In this document: positions 1-63,590 of the stretch, piece by piece
How the letters are laid out: each line of letters begins with the position of its first letter
Position numbering within the stretch: position 1 is the stretch's first letter
Virus record (IMG/VR): IMGVR_UViG_3300022866_000322
Span: 62,001 to 126,000 of that record
Reading direction: 5' to 3' (one strand)
DNA length: 64,000 nucleotides
Translations under genes and position numbers: made by a program
The notes under the pieces: generated by a model
Databases searched by the model: none
What the model was told of the DNA's origin: nothing
Seen by the model: only the letters and a program-made list of their open reading frames with translations

Positions 1-456
1 CTACAGTTTGATCAACTTTTAATAGTGGACAATGGTAGTCCAGAGCTTCCAGGCTGGGGCGATAACAGAATAATTTACAATCTTGATCGACCTTGGTTTG
101 CAAACAAGGATATCATAATATATCGTTACGAAGATACGATAGATACTGATGACCACCTAATCAGATCTGCACAAGTTGCTAAAGAATATACCACACTGTA
201 TGGTTTTGACAAATTGCTACACATGGAATCTGATGTGTACATTTTAAGCAAACGATTGGCTAAATTTATTAATGAACAAGACTTGGTAACTTTCCCTGGT
301 GAACTATGTGCAGATTACATAGGAGACAACTACGGCCAGACTCATGACGTACTACCAAACAATATAGATTATGCTACTGGAATTGGTGAAGATTGGGACG
401 ATGTACACCAAAAACATCTTGACAAGAAGCGTAATTACACATATAATAGAACTTAA
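1..456 (+). CDS. 5'-truncated ORF, glycosyltransferase (GT-A)-like
   Basis: Frame is open from base 1 (LQFDQLLIVDNGS...). IVDNGS resembles the GT2 N-terminal motif and LHMESDVYIL resembles the acidic metal-binding strand. Confidence 0.45.
   Translation, partial: LQFDQLLIVDNGSPELPGWGDNRIIYNLDRPWFANKDIIIYRYEDTIDTDDHLIRSAQVAKEYTTLYGFDKLLHMESDVYILSKRLAKFINEQDLVTFPGELCADYIGDNYGQTHDVLPNNIDYATGIGEDWDDVHQKHLDKKRNYTYNRT
419..447 (+). promoter_or_regulatory. Consensus sigma70 promoter upstream of the tRNA cluster
   Basis: TTGACA (419-424), 17 nt spacer, TATAAT (442-447). Confidence 0.85.
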
Positions 457-482
457 GAAATTAGGAAAGTTGTAGTAGTAAC

Positions 483-572
483 GGAAGTGTGGCCGAGTGG
501 CTTAAGGCGGGAGATTACTAATCTCTTGTACGTGCAAACGTACCGTGGGTTCGAATCCTACCACTTCCGCCA
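483..572 (+). tRNA. tRNA-Ser, anticodon ACU (unusual A34), long variable arm, encoded CCA
   Basis: Acceptor GGAAGTG/CACTTCC with G73 and CCA; anticodon arm GGAGA-TTACTAA-TCTCT (ACT at 517-519); variable arm GTACG...CGTAC; T loop TTCGAAT. Confidence 0.9.
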
Positions 573-602
573 AATGTTTTAACAAGATACAATGGAGATA
601 GT

Positions 603-758
603 ATGACAGTTAATAAGAAGAACAGCCCATTAACATATGAATCAGGCAAGCTAAGACTCGGTCCATTAAGCACAGGAAAACTAGAAGAAATGTTGAAAAC
701 TTGTAGACCAAGACACAAGAACAAAATTATTAACGAGATAGCAAAGAGAAGTAAATAA
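603..758 (+). CDS. Small basic hypothetical protein (51 aa) between tRNAs
   Basis: GGAGA Shine-Dalgarno at 594-598; MTVNKKNSPLTYESGKLRLGPLSTGKLEEMLKTCRPRHKNKIINEIAKRSK; below the ORF-track cutoff. Confidence 0.6.
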   Translation: MTVNKKNSPLTYESGKLRLGPLSTGKLEEMLKTCRPRHKNKIINEIAKRSK

Positions 759-764
759 ACGCAT

Positions 765-841
765 GCTGGTGTAGCTCAGTTGGTAGTAGCGCCTGCTTTG
801 TAAGCAGGATGTCGGGAGTTCGAGTCTCTCCTCCAGCACCA
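765..841 (+). tRNA. tRNA-Thr(UGU), encoded CCA
   Basis: GCTGGTG...CTCCAGC-A-CCA; anticodon arm CCTGC-TTTGTAA-GCAGG; T arm GGGAG-TTCGAGT-CTCTC. Confidence 0.9.
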
Positions 842-846
842 ACCTT

Positions 847-921
847 GTCCGGTTCGTCTATCGGTTAGGACTCGGGATTTTCATTCCCGCAAGAGGGGTT
901 CGACTCCCCTACCGGATGCCA
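847..921 (+). tRNA. tRNA-Glu(UUC), encoded CCA
   Basis: GTCCGGT...ACCGGAT-G-CCA; anticodon arm CGGGA-TTTTCAT-TCCCG; T arm AGGGG-TTCGACT-CCCCT. Confidence 0.9.
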
Positions 922-938
922 AGTATAAGGAAACACTA

Positions 939-1163
939 ATGAAAAATGGATTGCGTTGGTTCGGCTTCATACTAGCAATGGTTAGTGCTTTCCTTTTAAG
1001 CGGAGGTAATCCTGATGTGCAATGGATGGGCTGGGCAGTTGGTACAGTTAGTTCTGCAATGTGGGTTTACTTTGGTTTTAAGGATAGTGATACTCCTAGA
1101 GCATTAATGGAAGTAATGTATTTGTTACTTGCGATGAGAGGAATATATAATTGGGTAATCTAA
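939..1163 (+). CDS. Small membrane protein (about 3 TM)
   Basis: AAGGA SD; three hydrophobic segments in 74 aa. Confidence 0.7.
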   Translation: MKNGLRWFGFILAMVSAFLLSGGNPDVQWMGWAVGTVSSAMWVYFGFKDSDTPRALMEVMYLLLAMRGIYNWVI

Positions 1164-1166
1164 ATA
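1160..1166 (+). promoter_or_regulatory. T4-like late promoter motif (CTAAATA) before clpP
   Basis: Same NTAAATA motif that recurs just upstream of many genes in the window. Confidence 0.55.
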
Positions 1167-1179
1167 ATAAAGGAACAGT

Positions 1180-1770
1180 ATGTCACTAGTACCAATGGTA
1201 ATTGAAACAACGTCAAAAGGCGAACGTGCTTATGATATCTACAGTAGATTACTCAAAGAGCGTATTATTATGCTGAATGGTCCTGTGGAAGATAACATGA
1301 GTAATTTAATTGTTAGCCAACTGCTGTTCCTAGAATCAGAAGACCCAGACAAGGATATTAATTTATTTGTTAACAGTCCAGGTGGTGTTATTACAGCAGG
1401 CATGGCTATATACGATACCATGCAGTTTATCAAATGTGATGTAGCAACCTATGTGATTGGACAAGCATGTTCAATGGGGTCATTCCTAGCACAAGCAGGA
1501 GCGCCAGGCAAGCGTCACATGTTGCCCTATGCTAGACACATGATTCATCAGCCCAGTGGCGGCACACGCGGTATGCAGAGTGATATAGAAATACAGTACA
1601 AAGAAATTACCAAGATGAAAGAAATACTCACAGAGTTGTATGTTAAACACAACACAGCAGGCAAGACATATGACGACTTTGAGATTGACATGGACCGTGA
1701 TACATTCATGAGTTCAGAAGAATCATTGGAATACGGATTAATAGACAAAATTATTGACAAAAGGCCATAA
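1180..1770 (+). CDS. clpP: ATP-dependent Clp protease proteolytic subunit
   Basis: [31 protein letters not shown] (catalytic Ser), MIHQPSGG (catalytic His). Confidence 0.97.
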
Positions 1771-1791
1771 TAAACCCGGATTATTAGCTGA

Positions 1792-2490
1792 ATGGCAACT
1801 CAAGAGCAAAAAGAAAAACTGGTAGAAATACTCAAATTCACTTCATGTACATATACGATCAGTATCTCAGGATACGGCAGGGAGCACGTGGTTGGATGTA
1901 TTCCCAATCAGTCTAGTATCAAGTACCTAAAGGACAACAACATTCAGTGGGAGCATGCACTGTTTATGGATCTTGATGAGTGGGTAGACGATGGGCATAA
2001 ACTACCAGACCATCCGTTAATCGACGATGATGGTGTGTATGCACGTGACTGGAGTGAGCTGGATGACATTTGCCGTTGCTGGGGTGCTGAGCGAGGTGTT
2101 TACACCTATATATCAATTGACGATGAGAATGGCGATCCTGTAATTGAGTTCAGCACAGACTACGAAACATTAACCAATTTGGGTGTGAGTTACGAGTCGG
2201 AATCTGAGGTAGATATAGATAATGTAGAGAAGGCACAACAGTATAGAAAAAAAGGACGCTGGATTGCAGAAGTCTGCAATTTCGAAGAAGGAACGTTTTT
2301 TGTGGGTGATATAGAACTAACACAACCGTTTGACATCACAAAACTATTAGTGTATGCTTCAACTATAAACGAATCACCAGACATTATTAATGGTGTTAGT
2401 TACGATAATAATCCAATTGACTACCTTGACAATAACATTATTAACAATAGTATCGAAAGCAATCTTATTGATTTAGATGAATGGACATGA
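1792..2490 (+). CDS. Acidic hypothetical protein
   Basis: Long ORF in operon-like context; no recognised motif. Confidence 0.65.
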   Translation: MATQEQKEKLVEILKFTSCTYTISISGYGREHVVGCIPNQSSIKYLKDNNIQWEHALFMDLDEWVDDGHKLPDHPLIDDDGVYARDWSELDDICRCWGAERGVYTYISIDDENGDPVIEFSTDYETLTNLGVSYESESEVDIDNVEKAQQYRKKGRWIAEVCNFEEGTFFVGDIELTQPFDITKLLVYASTINESPDIINGVSYDNNPIDYLDNNIINNSIESNLIDLDEWT

Positions 2491-2491
2491 A

Positions 2492-2926
2492 ATGCAAACA
2501 CTTAAAGTAGGATTCACCTGCAGTACGTTTGATTTACTTCATGCCGGGCATGTGACCATGTTAGAAGATGCGAGAAGTCAATGTGACTATTTGATATGTG
2601 GATTACAGGTTGACCCTACCCTGGATCGTCCAGAAAAGAACTCACCTATACAGTCTGTGGTGGAACGATATACACAGCTCAAAGCATTATCTTGTGTAGA
2701 TGAAATAGTTCCGTATGCTTACGAACGTGACTTAGAAGATATACTCAGCATGTACAATATTGATGTGCGTATACTAGGTGATGAGTATGCTACCAAAGAC
2801 TTCACAGGTAAAGACATCTGTAAACAGCGTGGCATACAGCTATACTTTAACAAGCGTGAACACAGATTCAGTTCAAGCGAACTGCGTCAACGAGTAGCGG
2901 CTAAAGAGAAGTCTTCTTCTTCTTAG
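2492..2926 (+). CDS. Cytidylyltransferase (glycerol-3-phosphate cytidylyltransferase/TagD-like)
   Basis: GFTCSTFDLLHAGH (HxGH motif), ILGDEY, REHRFSSSELR. Start moved to ATG 2492. Confidence 0.9.
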   Translation: MQTLKVGFTCSTFDLLHAGHVTMLEDARSQCDYLICGLQVDPTLDRPEKNSPIQSVVERYTQLKALSCVDEIVPYAYERDLEDILSMYNIDVRILGDEYATKDFTGKDICKQRGIQLYFNKREHRFSSSELRQRVAAKEKSSSS

Positions 2927-3074
2927 TGGTTGACTTGGCTTTAGTTGGTTTGTACACATCAGTTATTTCAGTTGATTCCATTGGTATTGCTTTTGCCTTT
3001 TGTTTTTCTTTCGCTTCTCTTTTGGCTTGCATTTCTGCTGGAGTTATTGTGTTGCCTTTAACTTTAAAAACCAT
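2901..3074 (-). CDS. Small Lys-rich hypothetical protein, probably late
   Basis: On the minus strand, TATAAATA (3110-3103) and an AAAGGA SD precede MVFKVKGNTIT...KKKKTSL. Confidence 0.65.
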   Translation of the reverse strand: MVFKVKGNTITPAEMQAKREAKEKQKAKAIPMESTEITDVYKPTKAKSTTKKKKTSL

Positions 3075-3102
3075 GATCGACATTTCCTTTAATTGTTATA
3101 AG

Positions 3103-3110
3103 TATTTATA
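3103..3110 (-). promoter_or_regulatory. Exact T4 late promoter consensus TATAAATA
   Basis: Forward strand reads TATTTATA at 3103-3110. Confidence 0.65.
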
Positions 3111-3349
3111 TGCTGGTCGATCATTATCATCCCTTCAGGTTCCATGCAACAGTGCCATGGCCTGGACAACCAGACAATCCACAAGTGGATTGGGTATGGG
3201 GTATTGGGCAAATTGAAGACTGGTTGCAACAGTGCATTGGTTCTAGGCATCAACTATGGGCATACGATGATTGCCCTGCAACGTATCAATTAGGAGTAGC
3301 ATTCAAGTGGGACAAGGATCGAACACTTTTTGTATTAACTTGGTCATAA
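3110..3349 (+). CDS. Hypothetical protein (Trp-rich)
   Basis: 79 aa ORF abutting the next gene. Confidence 0.6.
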   Translation: MLVDHYHPFRFHATVPWPGQPDNPQVDWVWGIGQIEDWLQQCIGSRHQLWAYDDCPATYQLGVAFKWDKDRTLFVLTWS

Positions 3350-3353
3350 ACTA

Positions 3354-4511
3354 ATGGCAGAGCTCAACAAAGAGTTCTTCTGCCCAGCTCCCTTTGCAGG
3401 AGGTTATGTTGACGTAAAGAAGATAGCATATCCTTGCTGTAAAATACGTGTAACAGAATTTGAAAATGATCCAGGTTGCGACTTAACTAAAAACAACCTA
3501 TCAACAGCATATCATAGTAAATCTTTTAAAGATCTGAGGGAACAGTTCGAAAACAATGAGAAACCTGATCAATGTCAGGAATGTTGGCGTGCCGAAGACG
3601 CAGGTTGTGAGAGTGAAAGAAATCACCTAACTAAGTTAATCACTACTGATACAAACAGTTTGAATTCGGCTAACGTAGGACTTAAAAAGTTACAAATAGT
3701 GCCGAGTATCACCTGCAATTTCAAATGTAGAATTTGCGACAGTAATTTTAGTTCAGCTATTGCTATGGAAGAAATAAAATTTGCAGAGGCCGCAAATAAA
3801 GAAAAACTTTTATTAAATTTGCAAAATCGCAGTCTAATAGACATAGAATACACTAAAAGAATATTGCAAGACAGTTTATCTGGTTTGACAATGTTACAAG
3901 TATTGGGTGGCGAGCCGACACTGATGAAAAACTTGCCAGAGCTACTAGAGTATATAATTGCACAAGGAGATCACAAACACATAGACCTTGCAATTAACAC
4001 CAATGGCAGTATTTGGTCTGACCGTTTAACGGAAATACTACAAAAATTTAAAAGTTGTAAAATGCTAATTAGCATAGATGCTTTTGGTAAAAGATTTGAA
4101 GATCAACGTGGGGGTTGTTGGCAAGATATTGAAGATAATTTCGACAGATGGTTGACTGTTCCAAACGTTTCTGTAATAATAACAGCAACAGTCAGCATAC
4201 AAAATGTATTATATGTAGATGAAATTGTAGACTTTGTAAAAAGTAAAGGAGTTTTTGTAGGTTGGAATTATGTAGATGACCCTAGTGAATTATCCATAGA
4301 TAACTTAACACAGACGGCAAAAGACTTGGTATACTTGAAGTACATAAATCACGAATCTAACGAGTTGCATGGTATTGCTACTCGGGTAATGCAAACTCCA
4401 GCAGTGTCTGGACAGAAATTTATTAGCCTAATGGACCTTTACGATTTACGTAGAGGTACTAACTTTAAACAATCACATGGAGAGATATATGATGCAATGT
4501 CAGCTAAGTAG
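3354..4511 (+). CDS. Radical SAM protein with N-terminal twitch/SPASM-like Cys cluster
   Basis: CNFKCRIC (CX3CX2C), LGGEPTL, NTNG; N-terminal CPAPF...YPCC...QCQECW. Confidence 0.85.
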   Translation: MAELNKEFFCPAPFAGGYVDVKKIAYPCCKIRVTEFENDPGCDLTKNNLSTAYHSKSFKDLREQFENNEKPDQCQECWRAEDAGCESERNHLTKLITTDTNSLNSANVGLKKLQIVPSITCNFKCRICDSNFSSAIAMEEIKFAEAANKEKLLLNLQNRSLIDIEYTKRILQDSLSGLTMLQVLGGEPTLMKNLPELLEYIIAQGDHKHIDLAINTNGSIWSDRLTEILQKFKSCKMLISIDAFGKRFEDQRGGCWQDIEDNFDRWLTVPNVSVIITATVSIQNVLYVDEIVDFVKSKGVFVGWNYVDDPSELSIDNLTQTAKDLVYLKYINHESNELHGIATRVMQTPAVSGQKFISLMDLYDLRRGTNFKQSHGEIYDAMSAK

Positions 4512-4530
4512 TTTTATAGGAGACGCAATA

Positions 4531-4917
4531 GTGAACTGGAAAGAACGACTTGTAGGAGCAGTGGGTAGTTTAATAGCAATATGTTTATTGATGTGGTTGA
4601 TCATTGCAACCATTCCTGCACATGCAGGAGTAACAGGAACAGCCGCACCAGGATCAGGTGCTAACGTAAAGCCAGCAGGTGAACTGGTAATTAAGAACAA
4701 CTACTGTGTAGCATGCCACAATGTAAATGTTAAAATGGTAGGTCCGGCATTTAAAGACATAGCCGCAAAGTACACAGAAGCTGACAGAGAGTATTTGGTT
4801 GAAAAGATACTCAAAGGCAGTATGGGTGTATGGGGTCAGATTCCTATGCCACCAAATGCTGTAGACCAACAGCAAGCAAATCAAGCAATTACTTGGATCC
4901 TAAGCCTTGAAAAATAG
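4531..4917 (+). CDS. Secreted class I cytochrome c (c551/c552-like)
   Basis: AGGAG SD and GTG start; signal peptide ending PAHA; CVACH heme motif (4705-4719); VGPAFKDIAAKY; GVWGQIPMPPN (axial Met). Confidence 0.9.
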   Translation: MNWKERLVGAVGSLIAICLLMWLIIATIPAHAGVTGTAAPGSGANVKPAGELVIKNNYCVACHNVNVKMVGPAFKDIAAKYTEADREYLVEKILKGSMGVWGQIPMPPNAVDQQQANQAITWILSLEK

Positions 4918-39826: not shown

Positions 39827-40662
39827 CCCATTATCAAACACTAGGCGTAGCAGAAAATACCTCCCAAGATGATATCAAAAAAGCATATCGCAAACTCGCG
39901 ATGCAACATCATCCTGACCGCAATAATGGTGACGATACAAAATTCAAAGAAATACAAATTGCATACGATGCTGTAGGTGACGAACAAAAACGTCAGCAGT
40001 ATGACATGCAAAGACAAAATCCAGGTGGCATTAGGTTTAACATCAATAATGGACAACATCCAGACATTGATGAGATGTTGCGTAACTTTGGCTTTGGGTT
40101 TGCAAGAGGGCAAGATCCTTTTAGTGGTTTTAAGCAACCTAGAAAGAATAAAGACCTACGAGTAGAATTAGTAGTGCCGTTAAGTAGTACACTAGACGCA
40201 CAAACTAAGACAATAAGTGTGCAAACAACCAATGGCCAAAGGCAAACGGTTAATGTAAAACTTCCTAGAGGAATAGTACCCGGAAGCACTATTAAATACC
40301 CACAACTAGGCGATAGTTTTTTTGAACAGTTGCCACAAGGTGATTTATACATCCAAGTGCAAGTGCAAAACGACACAGACTTTGCTGTCAATGGGTTAGA
40401 CTTGTACAACGCCATTGACATAAATGCAATAGATGCTATAATAGGTACTAAGATAAGTGTTACAAGTATAAGTGGCAAAACATTTGAAATGAACATCCCT
40501 GCAGGTACACAGCATGGCAAGAAGTTTAAGATTCCCAGCAACGGGCTGTATACAATGAATCAATCTAGTAGGGGAAGTTTGATAATAGTTATTAACATAG
40601 TTATTCCGACAGATTTAACTGGTGAGCAACTGCAAACTTTACGCACAATCAATAACCTTTAG
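39823..40662 (+). CDS. J-domain chaperone (DnaJ/CbpA-like, no zinc finger)
   Basis: HYQTLGV...IKKAYRKLAMQHHPDRN (HPD motif); C-terminal GDLYI, GTQHG, GSLII. Confidence 0.92.
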   Translation: MTHYQTLGVAENTSQDDIKKAYRKLAMQHHPDRNNGDDTKFKEIQIAYDAVGDEQKRQQYDMQRQNPGGIRFNINNGQHPDIDEMLRNFGFGFARGQDPFSGFKQPRKNKDLRVELVVPLSSTLDAQTKTISVQTTNGQRQTVNVKLPRGIVPGSTIKYPQLGDSFFEQLPQGDLYIQVQVQNDTDFAVNGLDLYNAIDINAIDAIIGTKISVTSISGKTFEMNIPAGTQHGKKFKIPSNGLYTMNQSSRGSLIIVINIVIPTDLTGEQLQTLRTINNL

Positions 40663-63561: not shown

Positions 63562-63590
63562 TTGACAAAATCATTAACTGAGTATATAAT
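63562..63590 (+). promoter_or_regulatory. Consensus sigma70 promoter
   Basis: TTGACA, 17 nt, TATAAT. Confidence 0.85.

What the first reader, a model, noticed from the sequence alone, without database searches (positions are those of the whole stretch)
483..572. tRNA-Ser with an A34 (ACU) anticodon in a split codon box
Seen: a class II tRNA with Ser identity elements (long variable arm, G73) and loop TT-ACT-AA. Established: bacteria read AGY with a GCU anticodon, and A34-to-I editing by TadA acts mainly on tRNA-Arg(ACG). An I34 here would also read AGA (Arg), which this phage uses often. Inference: the tRNA stays unedited to serve the abundant AGT codons of this AT-rich genome, evades host anticodon nucleases, or deliberately miscodes.
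Basis: partly seen in the sequence, partly recalled or inferred. Interest (0 to 1): 0.6.

Follow-up and report, generated by a model that had tools for sequence, protein, structure and literature searches.

The report
Phage serine tRNA with ACU anticodon
A giant salt-lake phage carries an intact serine tRNA whose anticodon starts with A, a type that reviews call universally absent, and it proved to be one of a large, overlooked class found in uncultured phages and some ultra-small bacteria, most likely read unedited to serve the phage's favourite serine codon AGU.

Summary
Window 483-572 (+) is a well-formed class II tRNA-Ser with loop UU-ACU-AA; A34 is base 517. ARAGORN and Rfam (54.5 bits) both call it.

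It is not a sequencing error. Three other IMG/VR contigs match it exactly over 521 bp, and contigs from two salt-lake runs (2017, 2018) show no differences.

A perfect sigma-70 promoter (419-447) lies 35 nt upstream. The phage's only three tRNAs, Ser-ACU, Thr-UGU and Glu-UUC, match its top codon for each amino acid (AGT is 42% of Ser).

It is not one: pattern scans found over 110 diverse phage tRNA-Ser(ACU) genes, about 16% of comparable AGY-type Ser tRNAs, plus chromosomal copies in Patescibacteria. Cultured Rhizobium phages are already annotated with it.

Published E. coli experiments show that an ACU anticodon stays unedited and reads AGU. The loop lacks the UACG motif that TadA needs, and the 221 kb of phage sequence held (about 63% of the genome) encodes only a dCMP deaminase.

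Best reading: an unedited Watson-Crick decoder of AGU. Deliberate miscoding and nuclease evasion have no support. Reviews call this anticodon "universally missing", so the class deserves attention.

The parts
419..447 (+). Perfect sigma-70 consensus promoter (TTGACA, 17-nt spacer, TATAAT). It sits 35 nt upstream of the tRNA-Ser 5' end, inside the end of the upstream ORF.
   Evidence: 12 of 12 matches; 3 perfect sites in the 64-kb window against 0.08 expected from shuffles. This is a consensus match only; transcription was not shown.
483..572 (+). tRNA-Ser(ACU). Class II, G73, encoded CCA, loop UU-ACU-AA. A34 is base 517, C35 is 518, U36 is 519, A37 is 520.
   Evidence: ARAGORN. Rfam RF00005 54.5 bits. 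Identical in 3 other IMG/VR contigs and in contigs of two sequencing runs.
603..758 (+). Small ORF of 51 aa between tRNA-Ser and tRNA-Thr, with no family match. It is probably co-transcribed.
   Evidence: Sequence. No Pfam hit. A copy with 23 differences in 143 nt (586-728) exists in another contig from the same lake.
765..841 (+). tRNA-Thr(UGU) with encoded CCA.
   Evidence: (61.7 bits). ACA is 49% of Thr codons.
847..921 (+). tRNA-Glu(UUC) with encoded CCA.
   Evidence: (50.2 bits). GAA is 75% of Glu codons and the most used codon overall.
939..1163 (+). Small membrane-like ORF of 74 aa downstream of the tRNAs, on the same strand. It gives a weak, sub-threshold NMN-transporter-like hit. Context only.
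   Evidence: PF04973, 20.9 bits, below the cut-off.
1180..1770 (+). ClpP protease gene, on the same strand and immediately downstream. It was used as the marker to find related phages.
   Evidence: PF00574, 262 bits; 80 related loci.

Best explanation
This is a functional phage-encoded serine tRNA. Host sigma-70 RNA polymerase probably transcribes it from a consensus promoter, together with tRNA-Thr(UGU) and tRNA-Glu(UUC). Host SerRS charges it, because SerRS reads the long variable arm, G73 and the acceptor and D-stem pairs rather than the anticodon. A34 stays unmodified, because the loop UUACUAA lacks G36 of the UACG motif that TadA requires. The tRNA then decodes AGU, the phage's most used serine codon, by a full Watson-Crick pair, whereas host tRNA-Ser(GCU) reads AGU only by G-U wobble.

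It belongs to a large, heritable class of natural tRNA-Ser(ACU) genes in phages and some Patescibacteria. A likely reason that Ser is the only split-box amino acid with such an A34 tRNA is that the G34A change is neutral for aminoacylation only where the synthetase ignores the anticodon.

Shown: gene integrity, reproducibility, the promoter motif, the codon match, conservation, absence of a phage TadA in the 221 kb held, and the mismatch to the TadA motif. Inferred: expression, charging with Ser, the unmodified state of A34 in the real host, and the benefit to the phage.
For: (1) Intact tRNA: a canonical cloverleaf with Ser features.

(2) Not an error: identical in 4 assemblies and in contigs of 2 runs.

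(3) Expression signal: a 12/12 sigma-70 promoter 35 nt upstream.

(4) Codon match: the record's only three tRNAs match the top codon of each amino acid. AGT is 42% of Ser (27.1 per 1000, rank 12 of 61), ACA is 49% of Thr, and GAA is 75% of Glu and ranks 1st. AGT/(AGT+AGC) is 0.69, against 0.48-0.56 in the Asn, Asp, His and Tyr boxes.

(5) The same link across phages: loci with Ser(ACU) use AGT for 28% of Ser, against 19% in loci with Ser(GCU), p = 2.5e-9.

(6) Conservation: 111 viral ACU tRNAs comprise 98 distinct sequences, and paired stem changes are visible among the listed closest relatives. The nearest ones (76-89% identical) lie in contigs that share 60-78% aa homologues with this phage, and four of them (L059, L045, L121, L020) have a ClpP homologue within about 2 kb of the tRNA. 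With the anticodon masked, 94 of 98 viral ACU tRNAs have another ACU tRNA as nearest neighbour. On a tree, 26 A/G changes are needed against about 96 for shuffled labels.

(7) Editing is unlikely: TadA needs YUACGAA, and single changes in the motif abolish editing (PMC12255301). An orthogonal ACU tRNA in E. coli showed no inosine, read AGU with U3:C3 of at least 95:5, read AGG slightly, and did not read AGC or AGA (PMC11066159). The phage's only CDA-fold enzyme is a dCMP deaminase.

(8) Tolerance: overexpressing Ser-tRNA(ACU) in E. coli improved growth in several media (bioRxiv 10.64898/2026.05.15.725136).

(9) Only Ser shows this. In the same phage loci the other split boxes use G34: Asn GTT 50, Asp GTC 17, Tyr GTA 16, Cys GCA 14, His GTG 5.
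Against: There is no RNA evidence for this tRNA. The metatranscriptome contigs that hit the window cover the ClpP region, not the tRNA. The host is unknown, so its TadA specificity, its tRNA-Ser(GCU) supply and its codon usage could not be compared.

Across phages, the excess of AGT over AGC in ACU loci is no greater than their general T-over-C bias at third positions (logit excess p = 0.73). The link is therefore with overall AGT demand and not with a specific AGT/AGC shift.

Most ClpP-defined relatives (73-90% aa) have no tRNA within 3 kb of ClpP, and four have Ser(GCU) instead, so the gene is not universal in the clade. Under TadA overexpression about 29% of editing sites deviate by one base from UACG, so low-level I34 cannot be ruled out. 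The identity-element and t6A37 arguments rest on textbook knowledge and were not tested here.
Confidence: 0.7

Rival explanations
1. A34 is deaminated to inosine by host TadA or an unseen phage enzyme. The tRNA then reads AGU, AGC and AGA, and so deliberately or tolerably puts Ser at AGA (Arg) codons.
For: The loop differs from the TadA motif at only one of seven positions (UUACUAA against YUACGAA). With TadA overexpressed, about 29% of edited sites are one base off UACG. About 37% of the phage genome is missing, so a phage deaminase could lie outside the record.
Against: AGA is 35% of Arg codons (14.4 per 1000) in this phage and 15.5 per 1000 in ACU-bearing phage loci, and 38 of those 111 loci also carry tRNA-Arg(UCU). 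In E. coli the ACU anticodon showed no inosine and no AGC or AGA reading. Single mutations in the TadA motif abolish editing. The only deaminase found is a dCMP deaminase. The Patescibacteria that carry it use Arg(GCG) rather than Arg(ACG), and 3 of 5 tested gave no TadA hit.
Confidence: 0.05
2. The A34 change makes the phage tRNA immune to a host (or phage) anticodon nuclease that cleaves tRNA-Ser(GCU). The phage tRNA then replaces a depleted host tRNA.
For: Phage tRNAs are reported to escape anticodon nucleases through loop mutations (my own knowledge; not retrieved here). ACU and GCU tRNAs form separate, stable lineages, and only 1 of 111 ACU-bearing viral loci also has a GCU tRNA nearby.
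Against: I know of no nuclease specific for tRNA-Ser(GCU), and the literature searches surfaced none. An ACU tRNA reads AGC poorly, so it could not replace a destroyed GCU tRNA for the 12.2 per 1000 AGC codons. Patescibacteria keep ACU and GCU side by side on the chromosome (39 of 82 loci), which fits a division of labour between codons better than evasion.
Confidence: 0.1
3. The gene is a decaying or non-functional copy, a recent G34A mutant of a GCU tRNA or an assembly artefact.
For: Four ClpP-defined relatives carry Ser(GCU), and reviews treat ACU as a 'prohibited' anticodon.
Against: All stems are intact, CCA is encoded, and a consensus promoter lies upstream. The sequence is identical across 4 assemblies and several sampling years. 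There are 98 distinct ACU sequences, with paired stem changes visible among the closest relatives, and ACU tRNAs cluster with each other rather than with GCU tRNAs.
Confidence: 0.03
4. The tRNA-like element serves mainly outside decoding. It could be an RNase P/Z processing signal that cuts the mixed tRNA-mRNA transcript, or a recombination or attachment site.
For: The tRNAs are interleaved with small ORFs in one co-oriented block, and no terminator-like site was found between 300 and 1300.
Against: A processing signal needs neither a conserved UUACUAA loop nor a match to the most used serine codon. No integrase is nearby, and the phage looks like a lytic jumbo myovirus.
Confidence: 0.05

Closest known systems
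tRNA-Ser(act) of Rhizobium phages RHph_TM30, TM40, Y65 and relatives (Kleczkowskaviridae; GenBank MN988521 and others)
   Same: About 76% identical over 84 nt. It has the same anticodon and is already annotated as tRNA-Ser(act). It also sits in a large lytic phage next to a few other A/U-codon tRNAs (Lys-UUU, Arg-UCU).
   Different: The phage family and gene neighbourhood differ, and tblastx found no shared proteins in the 3-kb locus. As far as I could find, its function has never been discussed or tested.
Canonical bacterial and phage tRNA-Ser(GCU), the normal AGY decoder
   Same: It shares the class II architecture, G73, the U33 and A37-A38 loop context and the codon box. Phage GCU tRNAs with the same loop and T-arm signature are about five times as frequent (92 against 18 in one scan).
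   Different: G34 reads AGC by a Watson-Crick pair and AGU by wobble. A34 reads AGU by a Watson-Crick pair and reads AGC poorly. ACU tRNAs form their own sequence lineages.
Engineered ACU tRNAs in E. coli: the orthogonal M. jannaschii tRNA (PMC11066159) and the Ser-tRNA G34A variant (bioRxiv 10.64898/2026.05.15.725136)
   Same: Same anticodon. Experiments show it is matured, active, not inosine-modified, reads AGU, and is neutral to beneficial.
   Different: Those are laboratory constructs in one host. The gene here is natural, phage-borne and conserved. Neither paper surveyed phages or Patescibacteria.
Natural unmodified-A34 tRNAs in four-fold boxes (Mycoplasma tRNA-Thr(AGU); Leu-AAG and Thr-AGU in Lactobacillales)
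   Same: A34 is kept in AT-rich genomes where U-ending codons dominate.
   Different: Those sit in family boxes, where misreading is harmless, and some are edited to inosine. This one sits in a split Ser/Arg box, the class that reviews call universally missing.
tRNA-Arg(ACG), the TadA substrate
   Same: A34 in a 7-nt loop with U33, C35, A37 and A38.
   Different: It has G36 where this tRNA has U36. The UACG motif is required for editing, so this tRNA fails that test.
Earlier passing mentions of tRNA-Ser(ACU): Acidithiobacillus tRNA arrays (PMC4758250) and chlorovirus ATCV-1 (PMC4810235)
   Same: The same anticodon is listed among horizontally moving or viral tRNA sets.
   Different: They are only listed, with no analysis. 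One carrier is a eukaryotic virus and the other an integrative element.

Membership tests
Bacterial-type class II tRNA-Ser | Cloverleaf with a long variable arm (stem plus loop) and a 3-bp D stem | tested here: met
   ARAGORN drawing. The Rfam alignment shows the inserted variable arm.
Bacterial-type class II tRNA-Ser | Discriminator G73 and acceptor/D-stem identity pairs (G1-C72, G2-C71, A3-U70, C11-G24). The identity set for E. coli SerRS is recalled from memory. | tested here: met
   All are read directly from the sequence and the ARAGORN fold. The identity set itself was not checked against a source.
Bacterial-type class II tRNA-Ser | Is charged with serine by SerRS | not testable with these tools
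   Needs an aminoacylation assay or charged-tRNA sequencing.
Natural tRNA-Ser(ACU) class (phages and Patescibacteria) | Ser-type body with loop UUACUAA, found as a conserved gene in many independent genomes | tested here: met
   111 viral loci (98 distinct sequences) and 82 genome loci. The closest members are 76-89% identical, with paired changes in the stems.
TadA (I34) substrates | Anticodon loop YUACGAA, with UACG strictly needed, in a stem-loop | tested here: not met
   The loop is UUACUAA, with U36 in place of G36. The motif requirement comes from PMC12255301. No inosine was seen on an ACU tRNA in E. coli.
TadA (I34) substrates | A34 is actually converted to inosine in vivo | not testable with these tools
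   No RNA reads cover the tRNA.
Phage codon-supply tRNAs | The anticodon matches codons that the phage uses heavily | tested here: met
   AGT is 42% of Ser, ACA 49% of Thr and GAA 75% of Glu. ACU-bearing phage loci are AGT-rich, p = 2.5e-9.
Phage codon-supply tRNAs | The codon is poorly served by the host tRNA pool | not testable with these tools
   The host is unknown. The only hint is a beta-proteobacterial-type permuted tmRNA.
Phage codon-supply tRNAs | The tRNA is expressed during infection | tested here: inconclusive
   A perfect sigma-70 promoter lies upstream, but no RNA contig covers the tRNA.
Anticodon-nuclease-evading phage tRNAs | A known nuclease cleaves the host isoacceptor, and the phage copy carries loop changes that block it | not tested
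   No nuclease for tRNA-Ser(GCU) is known to me or turned up in the searches, and the host is unknown.

The most novel reading that the evidence does not exclude
Nature does use a 'forbidden' split-box A34 tRNA, and does so at scale. On this reading, tRNA-Ser(ACU) is an old, selectively maintained isoacceptor carried by roughly one in six phages that encode an AGY serine tRNA, and by a minority of Patescibacteria that seem to lack TadA. Its A34 may carry an undescribed protective modification, or it may be part of a tRNA-replacement strategy against a defence aimed at tRNA-Ser(GCU). Either would give the first natural system in which to study why A34 is otherwise excluded from split codon boxes.
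Probability: 0.12. Interest if true: 0.8.

Novelty: new variant of a known kind. Interest (0 to 1): 0.6.

Why it matters
Reviews state that A34 anticodons in the Ser/Arg split box are universally missing and that phages lack the same 'prohibited' tRNAs (PMC8007984). A 2026 preprint calls the near-absence of unmodified A-starting anticodons a paradox and finds almost none in split boxes in GtRNAdb.

This window's tRNA, and the hundreds of relatives found from it, show that one such tRNA is common in exactly the genomes those surveys left out: uncultured phages and candidate-phyla bacteria. It is also the same anticodon that proved harmless or beneficial when engineered into E. coli.

This gives a natural system for testing the rules of wobble avoidance. 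Some carriers are cultured (the Rhizobium phages). It also gives a concrete hypothesis for why Ser is the exception: SerRS ignores the anticodon, and TadA does not accept U36. Finally, genome annotators should not treat Ser(ACU) calls in phages as errors or pseudogenes.

Tried and rejected
- **Near-identity search in the cultured-phage collection.** The window's first 3 kb found only a 63-nt tRNA match. The phage has no close cultured relative; its DNA polymerase is 50% identical to that of Sinorhizobium phage Phosso.
- **Synteny through ClpP.** All 80 related loci align only over ClpP itself at the DNA level. 69 lack any tRNA within 3 kb, and four carry Ser(GCU) in a different cluster. This route gave no orthologous position for comparing anticodons. 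Relatives had to be found through the tRNA itself.
- **RNA evidence for A versus I at position 34.** The metatranscriptome contigs that hit the window are 99% identical over the ClpP region only. One joint near the tRNA comes from another organism's tRNA cluster. No conclusion was possible.
- **Three common environmental ACU tRNA types queried against cultured phages.** Only 75-81% matches came back, and the four hits I inspected (121Q, S-SKS1, Bastille, A3Wally) were UGA or GCU tRNAs.
- **Literature searches by anticodon name.** These were mostly noise, because parentheses cannot be searched. PMC6409571 and PMC8421152 held nothing on ACU.
- **Test for an AGT-specific bias beyond general T3 bias in ACU-bearing phages.** Negative, p = 0.73.
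- **TadA search in five Patescibacteria carriers.** Suggestive but not clean: one genome has two 81-85-bit sub-threshold hits.
- **Rejected outright.** Sequencing error, pseudogene, and an alternative reading register of the loop. The only 5-bp stem with a 7-nt loop gives ACU.

Full report
**Where the window lies.** The window is bases 62001-126000 of a 221-kb IMG/VR virus record that CheckV rates about 63% complete. GC is 40% and most genes are on one strand. Its T4-type DNA polymerase is 50% identical to that of Sinorhizobium phage Phosso and about 42% identical to those of Atu_ph07 and the Rak2/121Q-like jumbo phages. It is therefore an uncultured jumbo myovirus-like phage. Fourteen sequencing runs labelled salt lake metagenome (2017-2018) hold the stretch.

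**Checking the observation.** ARAGORN finds three tRNAs in the whole 221 kb, all within window 483-921: Ser(act) at 483-572, Thr(tgt) at 765-841 and Glu(ttc) at 847-921. The Ser tRNA folds into a clean class II cloverleaf:
- a 7-bp acceptor stem without mismatch;
- a 3-bp D stem;
- an anticodon stem GGAGA/TCTCT, with G27-U43;
- the loop TT-ACT-AA;
- a 6-bp variable-arm stem;
- a T arm with one G-U pair;
- G73 and an encoded CCA.

Rfam's tRNA model gives 54.5 bits, E = 2.8e-10. A34 is window base 517. No other register gives a 5-bp stem with a 7-nt loop.

**Is the A real?** A pattern spanning the anticodon arm, with the anticodon left free, found three further IMG/VR contigs from other samples. 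All carry ACT and are 100% identical to the window over 521 bp. Contigs of two runs from different years span window 1-3000 with no difference at all. These are contigs, and some may come from the source sample, but a one-off base-calling error is excluded.

**Signs that the gene is used.** A perfect sigma-70 consensus promoter (TTGACA, 17 nt, TATAAT) lies at 419-447, 35 nt upstream. The window has three such perfect sites where shuffles give 0.08. No terminator-like site follows before ClpP. The block therefore reads as one unit: promoter, tRNA-Ser, a 51-aa ORF, tRNA-Thr, tRNA-Glu, a 74-aa ORF, then ClpP.

Codon counts over 236 long ORFs of the record show that each of the three tRNAs matches the most used codon of its amino acid:

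| tRNA | Matching codon | Share of that amino acid | Per 1000 codons | Rank of 61 |
|---|---|---|---|---|
| Ser(ACU) | AGT | 42% | 27.1 | 12 |
| Thr(UGU) | ACA | 49% | 35.4 | 5 |
| Glu(UUC) | GAA | 75% | 42.3 | 1 |

 AGT/(AGT+AGC) is 0.69. That is higher than the T-share in the Asn, Asp, His and Tyr boxes (0.48-0.56).

**The surprise: it is not rare.** I scanned IMG/VR for the loop TTACTAA followed at class II distance by the common T-arm GGTTCGAATCC. ARAGORN confirmed a tRNA-Ser(act) in 111 of them besides the window's own copies, comprising 98 distinct sequences.

A scan on the T arm alone gave a sample not chosen by anticodon. It returned about 91 Ser(tga), about 22 Ser(act), one Ser(aga) and no Ser(gct). 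A scan allowing A or G at position 34 returned 92 Ser(gct) and 18 Ser(act) from the same scanned part of the collection. About 16% of phage AGY-type Ser tRNAs with this loop and T-arm signature therefore carry A34.

In the same loci the neighbouring tRNAs are the usual A/U-codon set: Thr-UGU, Glu-UUC, Gln-UUG, Arg-UCU, Lys-UUU and Leu-UAA. The other split boxes keep G34: Asn GTT 50, Asp GTC 17, Tyr GTA 16, Cys GCA 14 and His GTG 5. The A34 habit is therefore peculiar to serine.

Among cultured phages, ten Rhizobium phage records (RHph_TM30, TM40, Y65 and others) match at about 76%. RHph_TM30 is annotated tRNA-Ser(act), which ARAGORN confirms. Other cultured matches were gct or tga.

**Heritability and selection.** The nearest ACU tRNAs are 76-89% identical to the window's. 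They differ by paired changes in the acceptor, anticodon and variable-arm stems. Their contigs share 60-78% aa homologues with this phage, and four of them (L059, L045, L121, L020) have a ClpP homologue within about 2 kb of the tRNA.

With the anticodon masked, 94 of 98 viral ACU tRNAs have another ACU tRNA as nearest neighbour and only 4 have a GCU tRNA. On a FastTree of 298 AGY-type Ser tRNAs, built without the loop columns, 26 A/G switches suffice against about 96 for shuffled labels. This shows a heritable, stable state with occasional switches and nothing more, because related sequences share labels.

ClpP-defined relatives are not uniform. Most have no tRNA near ClpP, and four carry Ser(gct). 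tRNA content in this clade is fluid.

**Link to codon demand across phages.** ORFs in ACU-bearing loci use AGT for 28% of Ser (18.5 per 1000). GCU-bearing loci use it for 19% (12.5 per 1000), Mann-Whitney p = 2.5e-9. AGA stays frequent at 15.5 per 1000. The AGT/AGC ratio is no more skewed than third-position T/C in general, p = 0.73.

**Edited or not?** The record's only CDA-fold protein is a dCMP deaminase at G000 148364-148759. Its best solved relative is 4p9c (E = 2e-35), and the TadA model gives only 29 bits.

TadA-dependent editing needs UACG within YUACGAA in a stem-loop, and single mutations in the motif abolish it. About 29% of sites are one base off only when TadA is overexpressed (PMC12255301). 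The loop here is UUACUAA.

Direct experiments exist. An orthogonal tRNA with anticodon ACU in E. coli showed no inosine by cDNA sequencing. It read AGU with U3:C3 of at least 95:5, read AGG slightly, and read AGC and AGA below detection (PMC11066159). Overexpressing a native-backbone Ser-tRNA(ACU) improved E. coli growth in several media, unlike most split-box A34 tRNAs (bioRxiv 10.64898/2026.05.15.725136).

The editing and miscoding reading also clashes with heavy AGA use and with the tRNA-Arg(UCU) genes found in 38 of the 111 ACU loci.

**Why serine?** This part is inference from textbook identity rules and was not tested here. Among amino acids with NNY split-box codons, only SerRS ignores the anticodon, so G34A costs nothing in charging. 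For Phe, Cys, Ile, Asn, Asp, His and Tyr, position 34 or its neighbours are identity elements, and four of those tRNAs use queuosine. U36 also keeps the tRNA out of TadA's reach. The remaining risk, A34 reading AGG, is small where AGG is rare; here it is 4.6 per 1000, rank 54.

**Cellular carriers.** Of the 120 loci returned, 82 hold a real Ser(act), and 46 of those are named as Patescibacteria/CPR lineages. Another 19 are 'uncultured Gammaproteobacteria/Pseudomonadales' bins, some of which have the same gene-cluster layout. The rest are short contigs, at least one of which (L218) has a phage-like tRNA cluster.

In 39 of the 82, a Ser(gct) lies within 8 kb. The clusters carry Arg(gcg) and Arg(ccg) but never Arg(acg). 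A TadA model found nothing in 3 of 5 such genomes, a weak hit in one, and two sub-threshold hits in another. In an even sample of 301 genomes of that phylum, 12 have the pattern, 11 of them tRNA-like, with no hits to the reversed control. It is a minority trait there, probably in lineages without TadA.

**What the literature says.** PMC8007984 states that ANN anticodons in split boxes, including Ser-Arg, are universally missing and that phages lack the same 'prohibited' genes. The 2026 preprint finds split-box ANN genes only sporadically in GtRNAdb: 5 of about 240,000 genes after filtering. It did not look at phages. tRNA-Ser(ACU) is merely listed for Acidithiobacillus tRNA arrays and for chlorovirus ATCV-1. 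I found no paper that describes the phage or CPR class. My searches cover open-access text only.

**Verdict.** The feature is real, intact and reproducible. It is best explained as an unedited Watson-Crick decoder of AGU that tops up the supply for the phage's favourite serine codon (confidence 0.7).

It is a new variant of a known kind. The known kind is the phage codon-supply tRNA. The variation is an anticodon class that textbooks exclude. This particular gene is one member of a large class already present, though unremarked, in databases.

Still to be shown: expression, charging, the state of A34 in the true host, and any fitness benefit.

Noticed in passing
outside the window: G000:C1:42675-43013 (+), read as locus L525:675-1013: The phage encodes a permuted (two-piece) tmRNA. 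Rfam gives tmRNA_permuted 147 bits and beta_tmRNA 140.9 bits. ARAGORN gives the tag peptide ANENSYFEEFALAA. This is a possible hint that the host is a proteobacterium with two-piece tmRNA.
   Followed up: partly
loci L124-L243 (genome contigs), e.g. L136, L150, L160, L200, L226: Patescibacteria chromosomes carry tRNA-Ser(ACT) in serine/arginine tRNA clusters beside Ser(GCT), with Arg(GCG) and Arg(CCG) and no Arg(ACG). 12 of 301 sampled genomes of the phylum have the pattern. TadA was not found in 3 of 5 carriers.
   Followed up: partly
window 419-447, 40415-40442, 63562-63590 (+): There are three perfect sigma-70 consensus promoters (TTGACA, 16-18 nt, TATAAT) in 64 kb, where 0.08 is expected. 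This suggests the phage relies on host sigma-70 polymerase for some units.
   Followed up: partly
window 1180-4917 (+): Directly after the tRNAs comes a run of auxiliary-looking genes: ClpP (1180-1770), a cytidylyltransferase-like protein (2477-2926), a radical SAM protein (3354-4511) and a cytochrome c-like protein (4477-4917).
   Followed up: no
viral loci L007-L123: The phage loci that carry Ser(ACT) also hold 18 tRNA-Ile(TAT) genes, an anticodon that is rare in bacteria. A few other A34 tRNAs occur there: Gly(ACC) twice, Phe(AAA) once and Thr(AGT) once. One Ser(AGA) occurs in L282.
   Followed up: no
window 586-728 and 1808-1886: Both salt-lake runs hold a second contig, from a diverged relative. 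It matches the small ORF with 23 differences in 143 nt and then rejoins at 1808, with 2357 other letters in between. The tRNA-Ser region of that relative did not align.
   Followed up: no
window 1061-1346, 1843-2188: Marine metatranscriptome contigs are about 99% identical to the ClpP region and the next gene. A near-identical phage therefore occurs in marine samples, possibly transcribed, although DNA carry-over is not excluded.
   Followed up: no
outside the window: G000:C1:148364-148759 (-), locus L443:1447-1908: A phage dCMP deaminase of 153 aa. Its closest solved structure is the cyanophage S-TIM5 enzyme 4p9c. It is the only CDA-fold deaminase in the record.
   Followed up: yes
loci L491-L493, L496: Phages whose ClpP is about 78% identical carry a different tRNA cluster downstream of ClpP (Trp, Glu, Ser(GCT), Gly, Thr, Ala). 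tRNA sets turn over quickly in this phage group.
   Followed up: partly
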